Shown: positions 24,281 through 49,371 of the stretch, piece after piece
Layout: each line of letters starts with the position of its first letter
How positions within the stretch are numbered: the first letter of the stretch is position 1
Assembly (NCBI RefSeq): GCF_022045235.1
Contig: NW_027266297.1
Coordinates: forward strand, 38,006,001-38,070,000
Direction: 5' to 3'
Length of the DNA stretch: 64,000 bases
From: Haliotis cracherodii
Taxonomy: Eukaryota
The notes under the pieces: generated by a model
What the model saw: only the letters and a program-made list of their open reading frames with translations
Database searches by the model: none
Told to the model about the DNA's origin: nothing
Translations under genes and position numbers: made by a program

Positions 24281-25579
24281 TCATTTCCTGGTCACAGCTG
24301 AACCCCTCTTTGCTGATTTTGCCCCTAATCTTTGGTTAGACGCTCTCTCTGGAATGGCGGCAGATTGCCACCTGGTGGTCTCCTTTAGGCCGTAACGTAT
24401 GGGCGGAAGTCCAGCTTGACTAGCATTGCTACTGGCCACCGACCCGGAAGACCTACCCGTCCCACCCTGTGATGCCCGGATGTGGGAGGTTCTGGAGGCC
24501 ATGGCGGCTCTACTGTTCGACCGGATTAACGGGCTATGGCTTGCCTGGGGCCGGGAAACGTTTTGATTAAGATGATCCAGAGTTCTTCTTGGAGGATTGG
24601 GACTCTGTCCTCTTTTGGGGGGATTTGGGGTTTTAGAAGGAGCTAAGATATACGTGCTCATGTTGATGTTGTTGGTGGATGGCTTTGCTGGAGTAGCTTC
24701 CTCCTCCACGTCTTCCCTTGGCGTCTTCCCCTTCATGATGAGGTCCTTGATATCTTTCACATCACTATGCATTTCTCTGTTCTGCTCCCGTAAGTTCCTC
24801 ATCTCCTCATAGTTCTGGTTCATGACCTCCCTCATCCTCTCCACCTCTTGTCTCATGGCCCTGGATGCCTTGTCCAGTTCCTCCTTGAAGTTCCTCACCA
24901 TCTCGTTCTTCTCCCCTTCAAACTGGGCGAGTTTCATATTCTGTTGAGTGATGATGTTTTTGGCACGTTCCAGTTCCGTCTCCATGGTGGCACACTTGTC
25001 TTTCAACTCTTTCAGCTCCTCGCGTAACTTATGTATCTCATTGTTTTGTTCTTTATACAAAGTATCTGATTCTAGGTGCCGCTTGTCGTCACGCAGCCTA
25101 CTGACCTGTTTGAATAGTTTCCCAGCATACTCCTCGGTTTGTTTCACAAGCTTCTTGAGCTCATTCAACTCCCCTGATTTTTCCTTTATAATCTTATCCT
25201 TTTCACCACTGCATTTGACCAACACGCTTATCCTTTCATCTCTGTTGATCAAGGAGTCCTTTAAGCTACCTATCTCGTCTTCCTTCTTCTCAATTTCTCG
25301 AGTCTTTTCTTTGACGATTCTTTCGTTCTCTGAGGTATGATGCTTGGCCTCAACATCCAGCCGTAGTCTTAAGGCATCAATTTGTCCCTCGAGTGCCTTG
25401 TTCATGGTAATAACACTCTGTAACACGTTGAACGCCTCACCTGGCGCCATTTCAAGAGAAGCAGACGACGGCCTTGATGAGGAAGCGGAAGTGACGTCAA
25501 CACTACTGGCACTCCCATTATCAGCTGCTCTTGAATCTGGTCGAGGGGTGATGCCGGTACCATGAACCTTCAAGTGGTC
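24281..25579 (-). CDS. Coiled-coil protein paralog A, large terminal exon (about 450 aa total)
   Basis: 1299-nt open frame after a TTCCAG acceptor. It encodes a long heptad-rich E/K/L region and a disordered S/R/P-rich tail with GLPPI, and aligns with paralog B. Confidence 0.88.
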   Translation of the reverse strand, partial: DHLKVHGTGITPRPDSRAADNGSASSVDVTSASSSRPSSASLEMAPGEAFNVLQSVITMNKALEGQIDALRLRLDVEAKHHTSENERIVKEKTREIEKKEDEIGSLKDSLINRDERISVLVKCSGEKDKIIKEKSGELNELKKLVKQTEEYAGKLFKQVSRLRDDKRHLESDTLYKEQNNEIHKLREELKELKDKCATMETELERAKNIITQQNMKLAQFEGEKNEMVRNFKEELDKASRAMRQEVERMREVMNQNYEEMRNLREQNREMHSDVKDIKDLIMKGKTPREDVEEEATPAKPSTNNINMSTYILAPSKTPNPPKRGQSPNPPRRTLDHLNQNVSRPQASHSPLIRSNSRAAMASRTSHIRASQGGTGRSSGSVASSNASQAGLPPIRYGLKETTRWQSAAIPERASNQRLGAKSAKRGSAVTRK

Positions 25580-25682
25580 CTGGAAGCCAAATAGAAAGTA
25601 CAACTCATTTCTCTTGATTTGTAATGCCCCCGTGTGATATTGCTAATACAAAAACCCGTACTCACTTGGGCATTTTATTAAT

Positions 25683-32641: not shown

Positions 32642-32820
32642 AGGGACGGTCGGGTAGCCTAGTCGTTAAGGTGTTCGCTCGTCACACCCAAGACCCGGGT
32701 TCGATTCCCGACATGGCTACAATGTGTGAAGCCCATTTCTGGTGTCCCGTGCCGTGCTATTGCTGGCACATTGCTAAAAAACGGTGTAAAACCATACTCA
32801 ATCACTCACTCACTCACTCA
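32642..32820 (+). mobile_element. tRNA-derived SINE, family 1
   Basis: Same head and (ACTC)n tail as the 19179 copy. Confidence 0.9.
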
Positions 32821-35055
32821 GCAGTAACGAGGTCGCTTGTTATCAGTTAATATTGGTATTAACTTACATATACTACATACCAAAAAATTTAATATACACA
32901 GTCTAATTTCAAGATTAACAAAACACTTAGTACATACTTCCACTTATCAGAGATCGACTCTCTCTACAGTTCAGCTGAACTTCTATTATCGATCCGTCTT
33001 ATCGATTGATCAGTATACTATAGCTTATTGATCGAGTTTAAAAACATATAGATCAAATTACTTTCAGTGACAAAGTCTGATAAGAGAGCACACGCTAGAA
33101 CACGTCATTTATGGCGAGTGCCTGTTCATTTTATATACATACTGCAAACACAAGGCAAAACACTGGAAGAACGTGAGAAACAATCACATAGGTCTGGAAG
33201 TACTACCCAGTGTTATGTGGTAAAATAATCTGTTTGACAAATCATAACAGTGCTACAATGAGTTTTGCTCGTATGGGGTATTATGACATAAATATCTAAG
33301 ACCTTAATTTAAAAACTAGTTTCATTAAAATATGATAAATACTTGACATGAGTGCTAGAATATTAAAGTTTTTAAAGTATTTAAGTTCCCTAAAGCTATT
33401 AGATGTTTAGGAAATATTCCAATAAATAAACACCGACTATAATTACATAAATTAGTGAACTAATTATATCTAGTGTCAAAACTACGGTCTGTACATGCAC
33501 TATCACCTTATATATGCAATACTCATTAATATTAGTTACATCTTTTTAGATCTTACTTAATTCTTACATAATCGTCAAATAAACGAACACAAATGAATAA
33601 AATAATACATTGTTTCCTAAAGAATGTTTTATTGACAACGTTTCTTAAATAGATTTTAAACATGATAAGACTTTATGAAAATACAAAATACATTTTCTTT
33701 TGAAACATTGAGTTAGGCATATTCAACACCAAAGCAGAAAAGTATCCTGAGTTATGGCAGTTATTTAGTATCAATTCATTAAATAAACAGACTAGCCCTG
33801 TTCGCAGCAATGACGGGAGTATCGTACTAGCCACGATCTCGCTCACAATGGCCTCCCTGTCCGTGTGTGTAAACAAAAAAAAGTTTCAAAGTTATTTAAA
33901 ACCAGGCCACACATACCTTGTTATTGGAATAAGCCCGTGGTATCATATTATCCGTATGTACATTTTCCAGGAGTGTGTACCATCCGTATAAAAGCATGTA
34001 GATTCCTATTGACCACACTTATTTCAATCAGGGTGCCTGACCTACAAGTCTCGTCATGGGTATCCATGGACGCGCCACCATTACCGCGAGTCCCGTACGC
34101 TGCTGTAATCTCGCCGCGTTCAGCGTGTTGAGTTCGAGGATCGAACCACAATAAGAATGTTGGGAAAATATATCATTAGGTCTTCTTCCTTTTTTTATCG
34201 AAAATTGTGAGAATACTATTTTTTCGTGAAGATGAACAGGAAAACAATTCCCGTGTAACACTGCATTAAGGATAAAACCAAAGAAAACATTTAGAAAATA
34301 CATACATAAATCACCAAGTAATGTATAGTTTACCTAACTCAGATGATATAAATACCATGAAGTCAGTAGCTATCTTTATCACATGTTCTTTAAGGTTTCT
34401 AAGCGTTGTTAATTGGAAGCAAATGTCTTGTCAGTCACTTGACTACAACAGTTACTATATATTGTTCTTATTGTAATCTATCTTGCCCACAATGAAATAC
34501 TGAATATACACGTCTGTCAGTCTATTCCTTCACAACTACTTAAAATATAATGTAAAGGAAAGCAGGCCGTCATACAATTACGAGAACACATTAGACCGAT
34601 CCTACTCGGAAATCACCAATACTTTGTTCCCATGTGATTTAAAAGGGAAAACACTTATTATAATGTAACTTCCGAGTTTTTATAAACCATAATATGAAAT
34701 AATAAAAACTTCTAGTGGCATTGACAGTTGGTTAGTAATACATCACTGATAAATGTATTCACAACTTATTTTTGTTTTCAATCTATTCGACTGGGAATGG
34801 AATGGAAATGAGTTAGGGATTTTAAACAATCGTTTTACTTTAGCTTGGCATTGGGGTTGGTGTATCATGTGTAGAAATATACACTATAGCCAATGAACAT
34901 GTGTTTGACTTATAACAAACGCAATGTTCTAACAATGTTAAAACCGTGACAGAAATAACGACGGCGTGCATATTACCTATCGCCACCCATAACAATCGTA
35001 TGATATAAATAACCCAAAGAAATATGACCATACTTTGTTTTGGCAATATATGAAA

Positions 35056-35097
35056 GTTTTCTTTTGAGTGATATTGGTGGCCCTAAAAAGGGCCGTT
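35056..35097 (-). promoter_or_regulatory. Histone-type 3' end processing signal (SLBP stem-loop plus purine-rich downstream element)
   Basis: Minus strand reads AAC GGCCCT TTTT AGGGCC ACCAA (stem-loop 35094-35079), then CAAAAGAAAAC about 12 nt later. It starts 35 nt after the stop codon. Confidence 0.92.
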
Positions 35098-35129
35098 GAA
35101 AAAGCCAGACAAGGGCACAGTAAATGACT

Positions 35130-35534
35130 TTACTTGACTCTTTTAGCTGATTTCGCCTTAGACTTTCCTTTGGCAGCTTTTTTCATGGGTTTCTTTGCAG
35201 ACTTCTTTGCTGTCTTTTGGGGGGACTTCTTTGCTGATTTCTTTGCTGTCTTTTGGGGGGACCTCTTAGCTGGTTTCTTCGCCTTCTTTGGCTTTGATTT
35301 CTTGGCTGACTTTGCCCTCTTTGCTGGTTTAGGCTTGCTCGAGGATCGGCCGCGAGAGGTGCTCTTCTTTGGTGAAACAGAGCGCTTTCTTTTCTGAGCT
35401 TTGCCGGGGCGCTTACTGATGGATTTGGGCCGTTTAGGAGCAGCTAAAGAGGGCTTGGCAGGAGACTTCGATCGGGATCTGGAGCGAGATCGAGATCGAG
35501 AATGAGAACGCGACATCCTGGTTGGGCTATTCAT
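35130..35534 (-). CDS. Protamine-like / H1-tail-like sperm nuclear basic protein (134 aa, intronless)
   Basis: MNSPTR start followed by an (SR)n run, as in bivalve PL proteins (MPSPTRRS...SRSRS). K/S/A/R/P-rich, no acidic or aromatic residues, SPKK and a duplicated SPQKTAKKSAKK, no winged-helix domain. Confidence 0.88.
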   Translation of the reverse strand: MNSPTRMSRSHSRSRSRSRSRSKSPAKPSLAAPKRPKSISKRPGKAQKRKRSVSPKKSTSRGRSSSKPKPAKRAKSAKKSKPKKAKKPAKRSPQKTAKKSAKKSPQKTAKKSAKKPMKKAAKGKSKAKSAKRVK

Positions 35535-35593
35535 CTCGAAGAACAACACACTTGACAGTCTGCAGAACGTGACGAGAGTGACCTTGGTATCGG

Positions 35594-35609
35594 TTACGTC
35601 ATATTTATA
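35594..35609 (-). promoter_or_regulatory. TATA box with adjacent CRE-like site of the basic-protein gene
   Basis: TATAAATA (35609-35602) overlapping into TGACGTAA (35601-35594), about 70 nt upstream of the ATG. Confidence 0.7.
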
Positions 35610-37507
35610 TGCATCGCGCGGACGTGATAGAAGACAAGCAACAAATGTTCGGTGACGACATAAATGGCGTTAGAAGTATCGCCTTATTGTGTTTGTTGAC
35701 ATATATCAAATTGATGTTATCGTATGCGTAACGTGTGTACCGTCCATATAAATAGTATCACGTCACAGAAAGACCTTTTAATTTTAGGAAAACTCATTCA
35801 TATAATCAGTTGCAGCCAATTTATTCAGAAGTTTGTGTCTCATAATGTACGCGTGGACACTCGTCAGAGCTGTTCGCTGTTTTAGAATACCTAAATCTTA
35901 CAACATGATTCACCATAAATGTGATTCACTTATAGTTTACGAACAGATAATATCTGGGTACCCATAAAACCCGTGACCCGTATGTACTTTATTAAACACG
36001 GGTCAATATATGTCTCTGCAATTGTACAGCGGCGCACAGCGGCAACGTTCAGCCATTTTGAATGTTACCAGTTTCTGAAATAAACAAAATATTATCATAA
36101 ACGACTGATTCGGCCAGTCACAAGGAGTTACATCATTCTCTTTACATTATTTTTAGGCGGCGATCTTTAGATGCATTTAAACTATAGTAACAATACTGCG
36201 ATAGTTAAACACAATCGCGATACTCAGACACTATTAGAGTCTATGTAGAATCTATATGATCTAGATCTACTTCCTCACAGTAGATTTTCCAGCATCGTAT
36301 CACGTCCGCAATAGTTTCTACGTTCAGTAGGTTACTGGGGTAGTTTACTCTGTATGTATTTACTATAAAGTATAGTAAATGTCCTGAAAGAGTATGTGCG
36401 GGGATTCCGGGTTCCGGCAACCTGTGCTGGTCGTAAGAGGCGACTATAAACTAGATCATCGGGTGGTGTCGTACCCTCACGATGTGAGACGTCCATAATA
36501 TCAATCTCTGGTTTGTCTGGTCCTGATTCCTTTATAGACCGCCGACATATTGCTGAAATATGACCAGGCATCCATGCGATAATCTGAAAGCTGACATTCA
36601 AGGAAAAATTATAGATCTACCTGTATTGCAGTAATTAGTACTGTGATTCAGACTGACATTAGGCCTATTTCCTCGAATGTCGTTATAAATTAGATCTCGT
36701 ACGTTTGAAAAGGAAAGGCTCAAGTCAACTGCGCAGTATTTTAACTATTTTTCTAAATCTATTGATTGTCAATAAAGTGTTTGAATCGATTAATTTGGAA
36801 TAGTGAGGTGAAAAAAAAAAGGAAACCCAAGAAAAGGAGTATGCACATCACTTCAAATAAAGCCGCCATGCAGAGCTGTTTTTCCCTTGTCGCACGTCTT
36901 CGATAACTTGACCTGGCATGTGTCGTTACACTTCAAATGTGGTGCAATGTTTGTGTACATGAACGCGTGAAGAACCATCGGCATCGGCATCATTCATATC
37001 GGTCTTAACATTTTACAGCAACTTCAATCGATTGCCCTCGGTTACCAAAGACGCAGTCATTGTGAATAATCTCTTTTGGGAAACTATACAATGCAAAAAA
37101 GGTAAGTGACATTTTGTTTTGAGGTGAAACTACAGAAAAATACACCAATGTCATCAGAAGATTGTTGGCCCGATACCAACAAACACGTTCATAACGTCGA
37201 TGATCGACTCCGATCTGGACGCTCAAGGGCAATTAACAACTCAAGTTCATGACAGATTGGTCGGAACGATGGCGTAAAGAAAGACGTGTTTCAAACTGCC
37301 ACTCAGATAAAGGACCGGTTGCAACGGGCAACTGGTGTAAGAGCACAGGCCCAGACGGAAATCGTCATGCACAGATGGCATTTGCGTGCGCGACGTCCAC
37401 GAGTCTTTCCACAACTTACTGCACTTACTGTCATTTGAATCAAAGGCGTTAGTGGTATAGGGAACGTCGACGATGGGCTAATGTGATGATTTCTGATGTA
37501 TCGAGGT

Positions 37508-37941
37508 TCACTCTCGAATTCCATGACCGAAGCAAGATATTATTTTGGGGTCACTCTCGAATTCCATGACCGAAGCAAGATATTGTTTTGGGATCACTCT
37601 CGAATTCCATGATAGACCGAAGCAAGATATTGTTTTGGGATCACTCTCGAATTCCATGACCGAAGCAAGATATTATTTTGGGGTCACTCTCGAATTCCAT
37701 GATCGAAGCAAGATATTGTTTTGGGGCCACTCTCGAATTCCATGACCGAAGCAAGATATTGTTTTGGGATCACTCTCGAATTCCATGACCGAAGCAAGAT
37801 ATTGTTTTGGGGTCACTCTCGAATTCCATGACCGAAGCAAGATATTGTTTTGGGGTCACTCTCGAATTCCATGACCGAAGCAAGATATTGTTTTGGGGTC
37901 ACTCTCGAATTCCATGACCGAAGCAAGATATTGTTTTGGGG
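37508..37941. repeat. 43-bp tandem repeat, about 10 copies
   Basis: Unit TCACTCTCGAATTCCATGACCGAAGCAAGATATTGTTTTGGGG. Confidence 0.95.
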
Positions 37942-38039
37942 TGGATCCATAATGGTATGAGCTGGTATCAGAATGACTGGTCACAGGTCACTACTAGCAG
38001 GACAACATCACGACACCACTCGTGGCTTCGACTGGAAAT

Positions 38040-39893: not shown

Positions 39894-40961
39894 CTATTTT
39901 TTCTTGCTGTGGACGTTGGTCCGTTTTGAATCCTTGCTCAGAGCCGGAAGTGATGGTTTGAACGCCATATGCGCATGTTCTTTAGGTGTCGGCTGCACAT
40001 GTTGGCTATGATGTTCTTTCAATGGCGTCTTCGGGGGCTCATTGATGGTTTCCGACGTTTTCGTAGTACTTTGTTCTACCAGCATGTCTCTGATCTGTTT
40101 AATGTCACTTCGCATAGACTCGTTCTGTTCTCGCAATTCCTTCATCTCTCGCCACTGGCTTCTCATCAATTCTCGCATTTTACCGATTTCAAGTCTCATG
40201 TTCATCGAGACTTTATTCAGTTCCTCCCTGAACTTGACTTGAACGTTTTTATTTTCTTTCTCCAACAACCTGAGCTTTCCGCCATGTTGAGAGATCACCT
40301 CCTTAGCTTTTACCAATTCCTTTTCGAATCGGGAAAGATTTTTTCGGAGATAGCCGATCTCCCTGTGTAGTCCCCTAATCTCGTCCTCCTTCTCTTGATA
40401 AGCCGAGCCAGTCTGAAGTTTCCCTTTATCTCTCTGGAGTGTAGATACCTCGGACTCAAGTTCATCTGCATATACTCTTGTGTCCTCTACATCCCTGCGA
40501 AGATCTTCAATCTGACGTTGTATCTCCTCGATCTCGTTATTTTTCTTGTCGTTATTGTCTGTCAAATGGGTCAAGACTGCTGTCCTCTTCTCAACCTTTG
40601 ACTTCAGATTCGAGAGTTCTGCGTTCTTCTGCTCAAGTTGTGCATCCGTTTCATTCACGATGGAATCCCTCTGTTCCTTGTTGTGTTTGTAGTCGATCTC
40701 CAGACGTAGACGGAGAGCGTCTATCTGTTGCACGAGAGTTTTGTTGAGAGTGACAACCTGACTCATTATCTCATTTCCGCTAGCCTCGCTCTTGGTTTCA
40801 GAGCTTCCATCCGAGACCGGGTCAAGTGACGAGGTGATATGAGAAGTCGTCGCAGCTGATGTAGGTCTGCCATTTCCGGGGCTGTCGTTGCCTTCCACGT
40901 ACATGGACTGGCTTCTCGTCTGCAGGGACAGACCTTTAACCTTGAATGGCGAATTGTCTCC
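39894..40961 (-). CDS. Coiled-coil protein paralog B, large terminal exon (about 361 aa total)
   Basis: TTTTTCAG acceptor, 1068-nt open frame. Shares QIDALRLRL, F.EEL.K.S..MR.E...MRE.M and LREQN..M.SD.K.I motifs with paralog A. Confidence 0.88.
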   Translation of the reverse strand, partial: GDNSPFKVKGLSLQTRSQSMYVEGNDSPGNGRPTSAATTSHITSSLDPVSDGSSETKSEASGNEIMSQVVTLNKTLVQQIDALRLRLEIDYKHNKEQRDSIVNETDAQLEQKNAELSNLKSKVEKRTAVLTHLTDNNDKKNNEIEEIQRQIEDLRRDVEDTRVYADELESEVSTLQRDKGKLQTGSAYQEKEDEIRGLHREIGYLRKNLSRFEKELVKAKEVISQHGGKLRLLEKENKNVQVKFREELNKVSMNMRLEIGKMRELMRSQWREMKELREQNESMRSDIKQIRDMLVEQSTTKTSETINEPPKTPLKEHHSQHVQPTPKEHAHMAFKPSLPALSKDSKRTNVHSKKK

Positions 40962-42641: not shown

Positions 42642-44170
42642 TACTATTTAAAAAAAAAGAAACGCATAACCCGTATTTGCTGAGAAAATGTTGTATATTC
42701 AAACATGAATAACTTGGTAGGAAATGAACTTGAGTACATGGAATTTACATCCGTTTAGGAGACATCAATGTCTATACAATGATGTCCATAACTTGAGGTA
42801 AGGCATTCACAATATTCCTCAAACGTGAATGGAGTATCAATATCTGTTGTGCCCACGACGTGCACGAATAACAGTTCCCACACGCCTTGTCATGGACTGG
42901 ATGAGACGCTGGATAACGGCCTGGGGATACTCCGCCACTCCTCCTGCAGAAATGCAGCTAGTGGTGGAGAGTTTGGGGTTGATGTTGACGCTGACGGCGA
43001 CGGCGATCAAGTTCATCCCACAGGTGCTCTATTGGGTTAAGATCCGGGGAACGGGACGGCCAGGGGAGCACGTTGACATTGTTAGCAGCGAGAAAGGTCA
43101 TTGTGACACGTGCCGTGTGGGGCCGGGCGTTGTCCTGCTGGAAAATCTCACGTTGGACGTCAATGGCTGACAGGAGGTGTGGTAGCAGGATGGTGTCTCT
43201 GTAGCGTACAGCCGTCAGGTTTCCCTGGACATGGACAAGATCGGTACGATCGGTGTAGCATATTTCCGTCCACATCATCACACTACCTCCACTAAATCTG
43301 TCCACTTGATGCACGCAGTTAGGGGCATAACGTTCATGAACACGTCTGTAGACCCGGTTCCTTCATCACGTCTCTGCAACAGGAATCTGGACTCATCGCT
43401 AAACCAAATGCGTCGCCACTTGCGAAGGTTCCAGGCAGTCACGTTGTTACACCAACGGAGATGATGAACACGATGGTGACGACGTAGCACGTTCCCGACG
43501 TAGGGTCGCCTGGCTCTCAGTCCATGTTCTCTCAGCCTGTTCCGTACAGTCTGGCCTGATATCCTCCTAAGTCCTGGCACCCTGGCTGCAGTGCTCTCAC
43601 CCGTAGCAGTACGGTCACGCAAATGGAGGACCCGGATGTAGCGATCCTGGGCTGGTGTGGTGACTCTAGGTCTTCCTGTACGGGGACGGTCATTTGTTGT
43701 GCCTGTTTGGTTGTAGCGAGCTGCAAGCCGTGATATTGTGCTTTGGATAACATTCAGACGTCGGGTAACAGAAGATTGGGACTCTCCAGCCTGCAGTCTT
43801 CCAATGGCGATGTTCCTTGTGGCAGCACCAAGACGTGGCATGTTCATTTGGCTTGGAAACACCTTCTGAACGAATGCCTATTTCCGAAAGCAAACTTGCT
43901 TTTTATTGCCAAACACTGCATGCCTTTCCTGCCCAATTTCAACGTGCAAGATGCCACTTGTTGCGTTGTGGCGATGCATTTCTTACTCATTCTAAAAAAA
44001 TTACATCAAGGTCAACATTTTCAAGCAAAATCGATTTGTTGCAAACGGAAGCGTGTCAATCGATGCTCTTACCAATATTGATACATATTTTGACGATAAT
44101 ATGAATACAATCGGTATTATTTTCGTTTTGACATATCAGTAACACCTATGCGTTTCATTTTTGGATAGTA
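42642..44170 (-). mobile_element. Tc1-family DNA transposon, full length, degenerate
   Basis: Imperfect TIRs (TACTAT..AAAA..GAAACGCATA) at both ends, flanked by TA, enclosing a transposase. Confidence 0.92.
42837..43841 (-). pseudogene. Tc1 transposase with two frameshifts (about 43360 and 42960)
   Basis: Paired-like HTH, GRPRVTT, WFSDESRF, QQDNARPH and SPDLNPIEHLW, with 34 residues between D and E (DD34E). Confidence 0.93.
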
Positions 44171-48231: not shown

Positions 48232-49371
48232 TCGTTACGCTATACAAGCAAGCGAATGTTGTCTTTACGCCACAGGCGGCAATATTTCAGCTATATCGCG
48301 ACGGCCTTTAAATTTTCGAGTCTGGGCCAGGTGATCGGGCAAGGACCTAGTTTATGCATTTCCCTTGGCTTGAGATATTGAGGATCAGAAAAGTGGCCAT
48401 TAAAACTAAATATATAAGCAAATGTACCCAGAGTGTGGAGTCAAGTTATTAGAATTACTAAATTCAAATATTCACTGACATAAACATTCGTCACCACTCG
48501 CCCCTTTCCGTAACCTGCAAGAATTAAGACTCTCGCTATTCGGCGTGTCCCGGAATAACTCGAGTTGGTCACGAATGTGACATAAACTAATACGTTGTTA
48601 ATTCAATAACAACATTCAGCCAGTCTAGGTTTACCGCAAGGAGATCCAGGTAGGAAAGTAGATTATTCTTCATTTTTCGATGAACTTGGCTCTGTCTTTT
48701 CACATCAAAAGTTTACGACGCGCAAAGAACGCCGTCACGAGCATTGTGATGATGTCGTCACAATGACATTAAAATGACGTCATAATCCTGCAACCCGACA
48801 CTGCATTCGTCACCGTCCCTTTGCGTAACCTGCAGGCTTGTCCCGGAATGACACGAGATGGTCACGAGTATTAGACACTGCTGTATAATGTGGCTAGATA
48901 ATGCGTCACGTGTGCTGGAGACACCTTGTTCTGACAGCGGTATGTGTGTACAGTGCTGATGTTGAAAAGTTTATGGGGGCGGTCGGGTAGCTTAGTGGTT
49001 AAAGCGTTCGCTCGTCATGCCGAAGGCCCGGGATCGATTCCCCGCGGGGATACAATTGAGTAATTGTGTGCATTAATTATCAATTATTGATACTACTATG
49101 TGGCTTATAGTATTATCGTTATCATAACGTCTTACCAACGCTATCATTTTGTTCATCGTCATATTTCTCTAAAATAATTATATGGCTTATGACTTTAATC
49201 AGAATATATATTTCTAACGTGTGTGTAATTGTGGCATATGTTTACGCATGAAACATAATTTGAACTAGCCTGATGGGGAATATTACACTGGTCGAAAATG
49301 TGCACATGTCCGATGTTAAAACAGTGTAAAGTCTGCATGCCATTTCAAACAGGGTGTCAAAGTGGTCTGGT

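What the first reader, a model, noticed from the sequence alone, without database searches (positions are those of the whole stretch)
35056..35609. Protamine-like gene with no globular domain that ends in a perfect replication-dependent histone stem-loop
Seen: a solitary intronless 134-aa basic protein, with a PL-type MNSPTR-(SR)n head and an H1-tail-like K/A/P-rich body. It has a TATA box, the canonical GGCCCT-TTTT-AGGGCC-ACCA stem-loop 35 nt after the stop, and a purine-rich element at U7-site spacing. I saw no AATAAA in the next several hundred bases and no core histone genes in the window. Established: SLBP/U7 processing is essentially confined to replication-dependent histone mRNAs, PL proteins are thought to derive from H1, and characterised protamine mRNAs are generally polyadenylated. 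Inference: this is a non-histone-fold client of the histone mRNA pathway and a possible H1-to-protamine intermediate, whose non-polyadenylated mRNA would be under-represented in poly(A) transcriptomes.
Basis: partly seen in the sequence, partly recalled or inferred. Interest (0 to 1): 0.85.

Follow-up and report, generated by a model that had tools for sequence, protein, structure and literature searches.

The report
Protamine-like gene keeping histone RNA signals
An abalone gene for a small, very basic, unstructured sperm-type DNA-packing protein still has the promoter and RNA-end signals of a linker-histone gene, but public RNA data show its transcripts mostly run past the histone signal to a distant ordinary end.

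Summary
An intronless 134-aa ORF (35133-35534, minus strand) follows a TATA box. It is 30% K, 21% S, 13% A, 12% R and 10% P, with pI 12 and no detectable domain. Thirty-five nt after its stop lies a histone stem-loop that passes Rfam's cut-off (37.9 bits, cut-off 34).

New evidence here:
- The downstream element matches the genome's tandem H1 genes exactly, in both its 13-nt core (CAAAAGAAAACTT) and its spacing.
- The promoter has an H1 box and a 23-nt element shared with H1 and core-histone genes.
- A winged-helix "PL type 2" gene 0.70 Mb away on the same contig has the same promoter block and the same stem-loop cassette.

The genome is a Haliotis (abalone). Descent from H1 is therefore well supported, through non-coding sequence rather than protein similarity.

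In three likely RNA assemblies, coverage starts just after the TATA box. It crosses the stem-loop in single contigs at about coding-region depth and continues about 1.4 kb, to about 33.66 kb. The first AATAAA on that strand is at 33633-33628. The gene is single-copy, shows no splicing in those assemblies, and is not in a mobile element.

Best reading: a dual-signal gene of the H2A.X type. Whether the stem-loop is ever cleaved remains untested. Earlier scan notes report histone stem-loops on other non-histone genes in this genome.

The parts
35688..35694 (-). H1 box (AAACACA), 160 nt before the ATG and about 85 nt before the TATA box
   Evidence: The PL-II-type gene L073 has the same 12-mer context (AACAAACACAAT) at -157, and solitary H1 gene L076 also has an H1 box.
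35615..35637 (-). 23-nt histone-type proximal promoter element TTGTCTTCTATCACGTCCGCGCG, lying 5 nt upstream of the TATA box
   Evidence: Shared with L073, the solitary H1 genes L075-77 and the core-histone repeat on C37. Genome-wide there are 33 perfect and 54 one-mismatch copies, against 0 for the reversed control. The 39-nt block 35643-35605 is 89.7% identical to L073, E 3.7e-7.
35604..35609 (-). TATA box (TATAAA)
35594..35601 (-). CRE-like octamer TGACGTAA just after the TATA box (L073 has CGACGTCA at the same place)
   Evidence: A regulatory role is inference only.
35556..35580 (-). Approximate transcription start
   Evidence: RNA-type contigs end at 35556 (X1), 35565 (X5) and 35520 (X2). 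None covers 35672-36339, while the DNA run covers everything evenly. A start 25-35 nt after the TATA box is expected from general knowledge.
35133..35534 (-). Coding sequence of the 134-aa PL-type basic protein (stop codon 35130-35132)
   Evidence: It is 14.7 kDa, pI 12, and K+S+A+R+P make up 86% of residues. It has five S/TPx(K/R) motifs. There is no Pfam family, and the Atlas model has pLDDT 0.46. No indel is listed in the CDS in any run, while the 3' UTR has many.
35191..35289 (-). 36-nt tandem repeat inside the CDS, encoding the repeated SPQKTAKKSAKK unit
   Evidence: period 36, 2.5-2.7 copies, 87-90% matches.
35079..35094 (-). Histone 3' stem-loop GGCCCU-UUUU-AGGGCC, with 5' flank CAAC and 3' flank ACCA. 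Predicted cleavage is near 35074-35075.
35054..35066 (-). Histone downstream element core CAAAAGAAAACTT, 12 nt after the stem
   Evidence: Matches the tandem H1 genes (L007) 13/13 at the same spacing. L073 has CGAAAGAACTTTT at 13 nt.
33661..35129 (-). Long 3' UTR of the read-through transcript, with the stem-loop internal to it
   Evidence: An X1 contig spans 34760-35556 and the next spans 33661-34756. An X2 contig spans 34594-35160, and cover continues. Depth is similar to the CDS and falls at about 33.66-33.80 kb.
33628..33633 (-). First canonical poly(A) signal (AATAAA) on the gene's strand after the stop, 1.5 kb downstream
   Evidence: A CATAAA variant lies at 33677-33672, just before the X1 contig end. 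No poly(A) tail was seen in the contigs.

Best explanation
This is a single-copy abalone (Haliotis) gene with no intron seen in RNA assemblies. It encodes a 134-aa, fully disordered protein rich in Lys, Ser, Ala, Arg and Pro, of the protamine-like (PL) sperm-nuclear-basic-protein type. It is closest in kind to bivalve PL-III and the large vetigastropod "protamine".

It descends from a linker-histone gene that lost the winged-helix domain but kept the histone gene shell:
- an H1 box;
- a 23-nt histone promoter element next to the TATA box;
- a complete histone 3' cassette (stem-loop plus downstream element).

A PL-II-type gene that still has the winged helix lies 0.70 Mb away and has the same shell.

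Transcription starts roughly 25-50 nt after the TATA box. In public RNA assemblies, most RNA is not cut at the stem-loop. It runs on about 1.4 kb to about 33.66 kb, near the first AATAAA. The gene therefore behaves like H2A.X and other dual-signal histone genes. A long, presumably polyadenylated mRNA carries the stem-loop internally; the contigs show this form, but no tail was seen. A short stem-loop-ended form may be made where SLBP/U7 is active, but that is inferred and untested.

The cassette is preserved in both genes, which suggests it still matters, either for cleavage or as an SLBP-binding control element. A role in packing sperm DNA is inferred from composition and from kinship with the annotated sperm-specific neighbour.
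For: Anatomy:
- ORF, TATA box, stem-loop and HDE are all present.
- The Rfam score exceeds the gathering cut-off.

Histone shell:
- The HDE core and its spacing are identical to the tandem H1 genes.
- The gene has an H1 box and the 23-nt element. That element is shared with L073, solitary H1 genes L075-77 and the core-histone repeat: 87 genomic copies against 0 for the reversed control.
- The promoter block is 89.7% identical to L073, E 3.7e-7, although the two proteins do not align.

The neighbouring gene L073:
- It has a Linker_histone domain at 72.7 bits.
- It is 95% identical to a protein NCBI names [quoted passage not shown], and 56% identical to Mytilus PHI-2B over the aligned part (38% of the query).
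- It has its own stem-loop 37 nt after its stop.

Protein:
- No domain, and a disordered model.
- PL-like composition with SPxK motifs.

Transcripts:
- There is zero cover upstream of about 35.57 kb in X1, X2 and X5, against even cover in DNA run X15.
- Single contigs bridge the stem-loop.
- No joints appear in the RNA runs.
- Depth in the 3' UTR is similar to the CDS.
- The only A(A/T)TAAA on that strand is at 33633-33628.

Precedent: H2A.X makes a stem-loop mRNA in S phase and a longer polyadenylated mRNA otherwise, and many polyadenylated histone mRNAs keep the stem-loop (PMC5100578).
Against: - The RNA runs are only guessed to be RNA, and their library type and tissue are hidden. Contigs cannot show strand, true ends or tails.
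- No poly(A) tail and no stem-loop-ended molecule was observed.
- X5 holds only a CDS contig with nothing downstream. That could mean a short form dominates there, or simply that depth is low.
- Homology to any characterised PL could not be shown at protein level.
- Sperm expression and presence in sperm chromatin are untested.
- The 23-nt element is not exclusive to histone genes: about 60 of its copies lie at loci I could not inspect.
- U7 snRNA was not found, so HDE pairing could not be checked.
Confidence: 0.6

Rival explanations
1. [quoted passage not shown] The long RNA seen here is a minor read-through fraction enriched by poly(A) selection.
For: - The stem-loop and an HDE identical to the H1 array's are intact.
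- The cassette is conserved in the paralogue L073.
- X5 shows only a CDS contig and nothing downstream.
- In X2 the CDS contigs are deeper (about 96-116) than the contig crossing the stem-loop (63).
Against: - In X1 the bridging and downstream contigs have the same depth as the CDS (16.6 and 14.2).
- In X2 the 3' UTR bins reach 63-148.
- Fourteen probable RNA runs from 8 studies hold the gene, so it is not obviously under-represented.
- Per-contig depth is a poor measure either way.
Confidence: 0.15
2. The stem-loop and HDE are inert leftovers of the ancestral H1 gene. The gene is expressed only as an ordinary polyadenylated mRNA.
For: - Transcripts read through at about full depth.
- The gene is solitary, far from any histone cluster.
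- The solitary H1 genes L075-77 of this genome have already lost the stem-loop.
Against: - In the 3' flank, the only match to L073 at E below 0.1 is a 19-nt block over the stem-loop. The HDE and about 20 nt beyond it also resemble L073, and the coding sequences no longer align.
- The 13-nt HDE core is still identical to the H1 array's.
- That pattern is what selection leaves, not decay.
Confidence: 0.2
3. The protein is not a sperm chromatin protein. It is some other disordered basic nuclear protein (an SR/K-rich somatic chromatin or nucleolar protein) that happens to use a histone-type expression cassette.
For: - No tissue information is available.
- No detectable homology to any characterised PL.
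- The 23-nt element occurs at about 60 other loci.
Against: - Composition, size, SPxK motifs and an N-terminal (SR)n head resemble PL proteins. The head is very like Mytilus PHI-2B's PSPSRRSRSRSRSRSKSP.
- Promoter and 3' end are shared specifically with the annotated sperm-specific PL type 2 gene nearby.
Confidence: 0.1
4. The gene belongs to a mobile element, like the Polinton-like elements of this genome whose genes end in histone stem-loops.
For: - Earlier scan notes report such elements.
- I saw SET- and BIR-domain ORFs followed by stem-loops elsewhere in the genome.
Against: - The gene is single-copy.
- No inverted repeats flank it within 30-41 kb.
- Only one of the 15 such stem-loop loci I checked has the promoter element, and there it lies on the opposite strand.
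- The DNA-run depth over the gene is single-copy.
Confidence: 0.02

Closest known systems
Bivalve PL-III (Mytilus; GenBank DQ305039) and the 106-residue "largest known protamine" of the vetigastropod Monodonta turbinata (Daban et al. 1995, cited in PMC12216123)
   Same: A small, highly basic sperm-type protein with no globular domain. It is Ser/Arg-rich at the N-terminus and Lys/Ala/Pro-rich beyond. It is thought to derive from H1 (PMC5550673; PMC12216123).
   Different: - No sequence homology could be shown.
- The abalone protein is Lys-rich (K/R 2.5).
- I could not read the Mytilus PL gene paper (Eirin-Lopez et al. 2006, not held). Whether Mytilus PL-III also has a stem-loop is therefore unknown to me.
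- From memory only, bivalve PL mRNAs are described as polyadenylated.
PL-II / PHI-2B type sperm-specific H1 (Mytilus H1L_MYTCA; NCBI "sperm-specific H1/protamine-like protein type 2" of Haliotis)
   Same: - Same contig, 0.70 Mb away.
- Same H1 box, same 23-nt element plus TATA block, same stem-loop and HDE.
- Similar M-x-S-P-(S/T) and SR-rich head.
   Different: PL-II keeps the winged-helix domain (Pfam 72.7 bits). The gene studied here has none.
H2A.X and the subset of replication-dependent histone genes that also make polyadenylated mRNAs
   Same: A histone stem-loop lies close to the stop, with a distal poly(A) site about 1-1.5 kb on. The long mRNA keeps the stem-loop internally (PMC5100578).
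   Different: - The product is not a histone.
- The short form has not been seen here.
- The cell types and the switch between forms are unknown.
Testis-specific histone genes with replication-type 3' ends (mammalian H1t, TH2B); from my own knowledge, not checked here
   Same: A germline-specific chromatin protein gene that keeps the stem-loop although it is expressed outside S phase.
   Different: Those proteins keep their histone domains.

Membership tests
Histone mRNA 3'-end (SLBP/U7) substrates, Rfam RF00032 | A 6-bp stem, 4-nt U-rich loop and conserved flanks shortly after the stop codon | tested here: met
   37.9 bits against a gathering score of 34, E 1.7e-7. It lies 35 nt after the stop. 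The flanks CAAC and ACCA match other stem-loops in this genome.
Histone mRNA 3'-end (SLBP/U7) substrates, Rfam RF00032 | A purine-rich downstream element at U7 spacing | tested here: met
   CAAAAGAAAACTT lies 12 nt after the stem, identical in core and spacing to the tandem H1 genes. Pairing to U7 could not be checked because U7 was not found.
Histone mRNA 3'-end (SLBP/U7) substrates, Rfam RF00032 | The mature mRNA ends a few nt after the stem and has no poly(A) tail | tested here: inconclusive
   Contigs of three probable RNA runs cross the stem-loop and go on about 1.4 kb. Stem-loop-ended molecules were neither seen nor excluded, because contigs show no ends and the library types are unknown.
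Histone mRNA 3'-end (SLBP/U7) substrates, Rfam RF00032 | The gene lies in a histone cluster and encodes a histone | tested here: not met
   There is no histone-fold or linker-histone hit in the window, and the nearest is 0.70 Mb away. The protein has no histone domain.
PL-type sperm nuclear basic proteins (domain-less, PL-III-like) | A small, very basic K/R/S/A/P-rich protein without a globular domain | tested here: met
   K 30, S 21, A 13, R 12, P 10%; pI 12; 14.7 kDa. No Pfam family. Atlas model pLDDT 0.46, pTM 0.08.
PL-type sperm nuclear basic proteins (domain-less, PL-III-like) | Evolutionary descent from linker histone H1 | tested here: met
   The evidence is indirect, through non-coding sequence. 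The H1 box, the histone promoter element and the stem-loop/HDE are shared with H1 genes and with the winged-helix PL-II gene nearby. Protein-level homology is not detectable.
PL-type sperm nuclear basic proteins (domain-less, PL-III-like) | Expressed in male germ cells and present in sperm chromatin | not testable with these tools
   Run metadata are coded, and no proteomics is available.
Linker histone H1/H5 (Pfam PF00538) | A winged-helix globular domain | tested here: not met
   No Pfam hit even at E 10. No PF00538 hit in the window. No splice joint to another exon.
Dual-signal (H2A.X-type) histone genes | A proximal stem-loop plus a distal poly(A) site used by a longer mRNA | tested here: inconclusive
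   Long read-through RNA is shown as contigs ending at about 33.66 kb, near the AATAAA at 33633-33628. Neither a tail nor the short form was observed.

The most novel reading that the evidence does not exclude
The histone stem-loop of this domain-less protamine-like gene, and of its PL-II neighbour, is functional in male germ cells. One possibility is that SLBP/U7 cleaves the RNA to give a non-polyadenylated PL mRNA in a non-S-phase setting. The other is that the internal stem-loop of the polyadenylated mRNA recruits SLBP to time storage and translation during spermiogenesis. Either way, the histone mRNA machinery would have been carried over from H1 to a non-histone sperm protein. Together with the SET/BIR mobile-element genes, this would make abalone a system where the SLBP pathway serves a wider set of clients.
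Probability: 0.3. Interest if true: 0.75.

Novelty: new variant of a known kind. Interest (0 to 1): 0.5.

Why it matters
- For domain-less PL proteins and protamines, descent from H1 has been argued from composition and a few special cases, because the proteins are too simple to align. Here the non-coding shell provides that evidence. A domain-less PL gene and a winged-helix PL gene on one chromosome share a histone promoter block and a histone stem-loop/HDE cassette. This gives a concrete gene pair for studying the H1-to-PL step.
- It also offers a test of whether the stem-loop has a role outside histone supply, either as a processing site or as an SLBP-binding control element in a stored spermatid mRNA.
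- Practically, I found no predicted protein like it in the large public protein sets. It may therefore be unannotated in abalone genomes.

Tried and rejected
- **Protein homology.** The word-indexed search gave no hit at E <= 0.01. Full phmmer over 1.8 billion representatives gave 0 hits. The exact-sequence look-up found nothing. BLASTP against Haliotis, Mizuhopecten and Mytilus PL-II proteins gave only non-significant SR or K-rich scraps. The Atlas feature search gave nothing usable, and its structure rows are meaningless for a disordered model.
- **U7 snRNA.** The Rfam RF00066 scan of the genome found nothing. A pattern built from the HDE complement plus an Sm-like site gave two loci, neither with a convincing 3' hairpin. 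Rejected.
- **Closed or exhausted tools.** As a result I could not read the core-histone repeat on C37 or the other loci carrying the 23-nt element.
- **Mobile-element origin.** Rejected: single copy, no flanking inverted repeats, single-copy DNA depth.
- **Plus-strand transcript explaining the 33.0-35.56 kb cover.** Rejected as unlikely. There is no plus-strand poly(A) signal between 34706 and 35991, and the cover stops just after the minus-strand TATA box in three runs.
- **Literature.** The key Mytilus PL gene paper and the JBC review are not held. Full-text searches found no paper describing a stem-loop on a mollusc PL gene, and nothing on abalone SNBPs.

Full report
**1. What is in the sequence**

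On the minus strand there is an ORF at 35133-35534 (134 aa, stop 35130-35132). It begins MNSPTRMSRSHSRSRSRSRSRSKSP and continues as a K/A/P/S-rich tract.
- TATAAA lies at 35609-35604.
- The 16-nt stem-loop GGCCCTTTTTAGGGCC lies at 35094-35079, 35 nt after the stop, and is followed by ACCA.
- The stem-loop occurs once in the window, against none in 100 shuffles.
- Rfam's Histone3 model scores it at 37.9 bits, above the gathering score of 34 (E 1.7e-7).
- It folds at -12.2 kcal/mol, z -3.6.
- On the gene's strand, no AATAAA or ATTAAA occurs between the stop and 33633.

The protein is 14.7 kDa with pI 12. It is K 30%, S 21%, A 13%, R 12% and P 10%, and has five S/TPx(K/R) motifs. A 36-nt internal repeat encodes SPQKTAKKSAKK. 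It matches no Pfam family even at E 10. The Atlas's own model of it is disordered (pLDDT 0.46, pTM 0.08). It is single-copy in the 1.18-Gb assembly.

**2. Whose genome**

Egg-lysin exons are present. The neighbouring linker-histone-type protein is 95% identical to a Haliotis rufescens protein. The genome is therefore an abalone (Haliotis). Earlier scan notes also call it abalone.

**3. The histone shell**

I compared the 3' flank with real histone genes of the same genome. The canonical H1 gene has a winged helix and sits in roughly 3-kb tandem arrays on C23 and C39. It has GGCCCTTTTCAGGGCC, then 12 nt, then CAAAAGAAAACTT. The gene studied here also has 12 nt followed by the identical 13-mer. 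Both halves of the histone 3' processing signal are thus present and canonical for this species.

Upstream, the gene has an H1 box (AAACACA, 35694-35688). Just before the TATA box it has the 23-nt element TTGTCTTCTATCACGTCCGCGCG (35637-35615). That element stands in the same position in three solitary H1 genes (L075-77). A degenerate form occurs in the H1.0-like gene L074 and in an array H1 gene (L005), and a perfect copy recurs once per unit of the core-histone repeat on C37. Genome-wide there are 33 perfect and 54 one-mismatch copies, against none for the reversed control. It is a histone-associated promoter element, but not exclusive to histone genes.

**4. A sister gene**

A Pfam Linker_histone scan of the genome found a divergent winged-helix gene about 0.70 Mb away on the same contig (L073; G000:C34:37344437-37345042; 201 aa).
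- NCBI names its Haliotis orthologues "sperm-specific H1/protamine-like protein type 2". It is 56% identical to Mytilus PHI-2B over the aligned part, which covers 38% of the query.
- It has the same H1-box context.
- A 39-nt promoter block is 89.7% identical to that of the gene studied here (E 3.7e-7).
- It has a CRE-like octamer after the TATA box.
- Its stem-loop lies 37 nt after its stop, followed by a similar downstream element.

The two proteins do not align significantly. Their N-terminal heads (M-x-S-P-S/T followed by an SR-rich stretch) and Mytilus PHI-2B's PSPSRRSRSRSRSRSKSP look alike by eye, but that is a resemblance, not a test. Conserved regulatory blocks around unalignable coding sequence point to common descent and continued selection on those blocks. 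This is the strongest evidence that the domain-less gene descends from H1.

**5. What the RNA shows**

Fourteen runs guessed to be RNA, from 8 studies and five organism labels, hold 41-54% of the gene's sampled words. I laid three of them plus one DNA run on 33000-38000.
- The DNA run (X15) covers the whole stretch evenly.
- The three others have no cover at 35672-36339 and begin at 35556, 35565 and 35520. That is just downstream of the TATA box, so they behave as RNA and fix the start.
- No splice joint appears in them, so the ORF is not joined to an upstream exon.
- The cover does not stop at the stem-loop. A 789-nt X1 contig spans 34760-35556, and the next spans 33661-34756. An X2 contig spans 34594-35160, and cover continues.
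- Depths are similar to the coding region. In X1 they are 16.6 then 14.2. In X2 they are about 96-116 then about 63, with later bins of 52-148. Depth falls at about 33.66-33.80 kb.
- The first AATAAA on that strand is at 33633-33628, and a CATAAA lies at 33677-33672.
- X5 has only a coding-region contig at low depth.

Caveats: contigs cannot show strand, true ends or tails, and per-contig depth is crude. Library types are unknown, and poly(A) selection would hide stem-loop-ended RNA. Even so, a long read-through RNA of about 1.9 kb with the stem-loop inside it clearly exists and is abundant in these data.

**6. Reading**

The gene behaves like a dual-signal histone gene. H2A.X makes a stem-loop mRNA in S phase and a longer polyadenylated one otherwise, and many polyadenylated histone mRNAs retain the stem-loop (PMC5100578). 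I therefore take this as an H1-derived PL gene that keeps the histone cassette. Its demonstrated product is the long form. Use of the stem-loop for cleavage, or as an SLBP-binding control element, is inferred from its conservation and is untested. Sperm function is inferred from composition and from kinship with the PL-II gene.

**7. Rivals**
- An inert relic is hard to square with an HDE core still identical to the H1 array's and a cassette kept in both genes.
- A non-sperm basic protein cannot be excluded without tissue data.
- A mobile-element gene is excluded by single copy, absence of flanking inverted repeats and single-copy DNA depth.

**8. Context in this genome**

Histone stem-loops with downstream elements also follow SET-domain and BIR-domain ORFs elsewhere in the genome. 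Earlier scan notes ascribe such genes to Polinton-like elements. The premise that the stem-loop is confined to histone genes is therefore already weak in this genome.

**9. Novelty**

PL proteins of H1 origin are known, and so are dual-signal histone genes. I could not read the 2006 paper on the Mytilus PL genes. No held paper describes a stem-loop on a mollusc PL gene. I rate the finding a new variant of a known kind, of moderate interest.

**10. Limits**

Noticed in passing
L004 (G000:C56:40235791), L040 (C67:53727809), L034 (C12:47712533), L032 (C15:1256258): Histone stem-loops with HDE-like flanks follow non-histone ORFs. Two SET-domain ORFs of 297/302 aa have the stem-loop 14 nt after the stop. 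BIR-like ORFs have it about 55 nt after (the L034 ORF has a confirmed BIR domain; L032 was judged by eye). Several other loci share an extended CTTTCATC..TTGCTTTG tail, as a dispersed repeat would. This fits earlier notes on Polinton-like elements.
   Followed up: partly
G000:C34:37344437-37345042 (L073:1938-2543): A PL-II-type sperm-specific H1 gene with a winged helix also ends in a histone stem-loop (37 nt after its stop). Its nearest poly(A) signal is 726 nt downstream. Its transcripts were not examined.
   Followed up: partly
G000:C34:53758484, C34:53776473, C10:10573716, C78:18279978 and about 60 other sites: Further copies of the 23-nt histone-type promoter element. Some carry the TCACGTCCGCGCG subtype seen only in the two PL genes among the genes I inspected. 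They could mark more sperm-type or histone-regulated genes.
   Followed up: no
L075-L077 (G000:C34:67.46-67.86 Mb) and L074 (C12:34.44 Mb): Three solitary somatic-like H1 genes and one H1.0-like gene carry the promoter element. They have no stem-loop within 2.5 kb and have poly(A) signals instead, making them replication-independent-type H1 genes.
   Followed up: partly
window 24281-25603 (-) and 39894-40904 (-): Two paralogous long coiled-coil ORFs (440 and 336 aa, sharing QIDALRLRL...) flank the PL gene on the same strand. They give only weak coiled-coil Pfam hits.
   Followed up: partly
window 36340-36673 and 37008-37675: Very high-copy repeats. DNA-run summed contig depth reaches about 22,850 at 36340-36506 and about 3,000 at 37175-37341, against about 32 for single-copy sequence. 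Short pieces also appear in the RNA runs.
   Followed up: no
window 32648-32719 (+) and 48987-49045 (+): Two marginal Rfam tRNA hits (about 29.7 bits, cut-off 29). They are probably tRNA-derived SINE heads rather than tRNA genes.
   Followed up: no
window 42958-43862 (-): ORFs that look like a Tc1/mariner-type transposase remnant.
   Followed up: no
window 35137-35405: All five coding differences listed between the window and the laid runs change the amino acid, but they keep the composition (V>A, R>K, S>A, Q>K, G>S). No indel is listed in the CDS, while the 3' UTR has many. This is the pattern expected of a fast-evolving protein constrained mainly in composition.
   Followed up: partly
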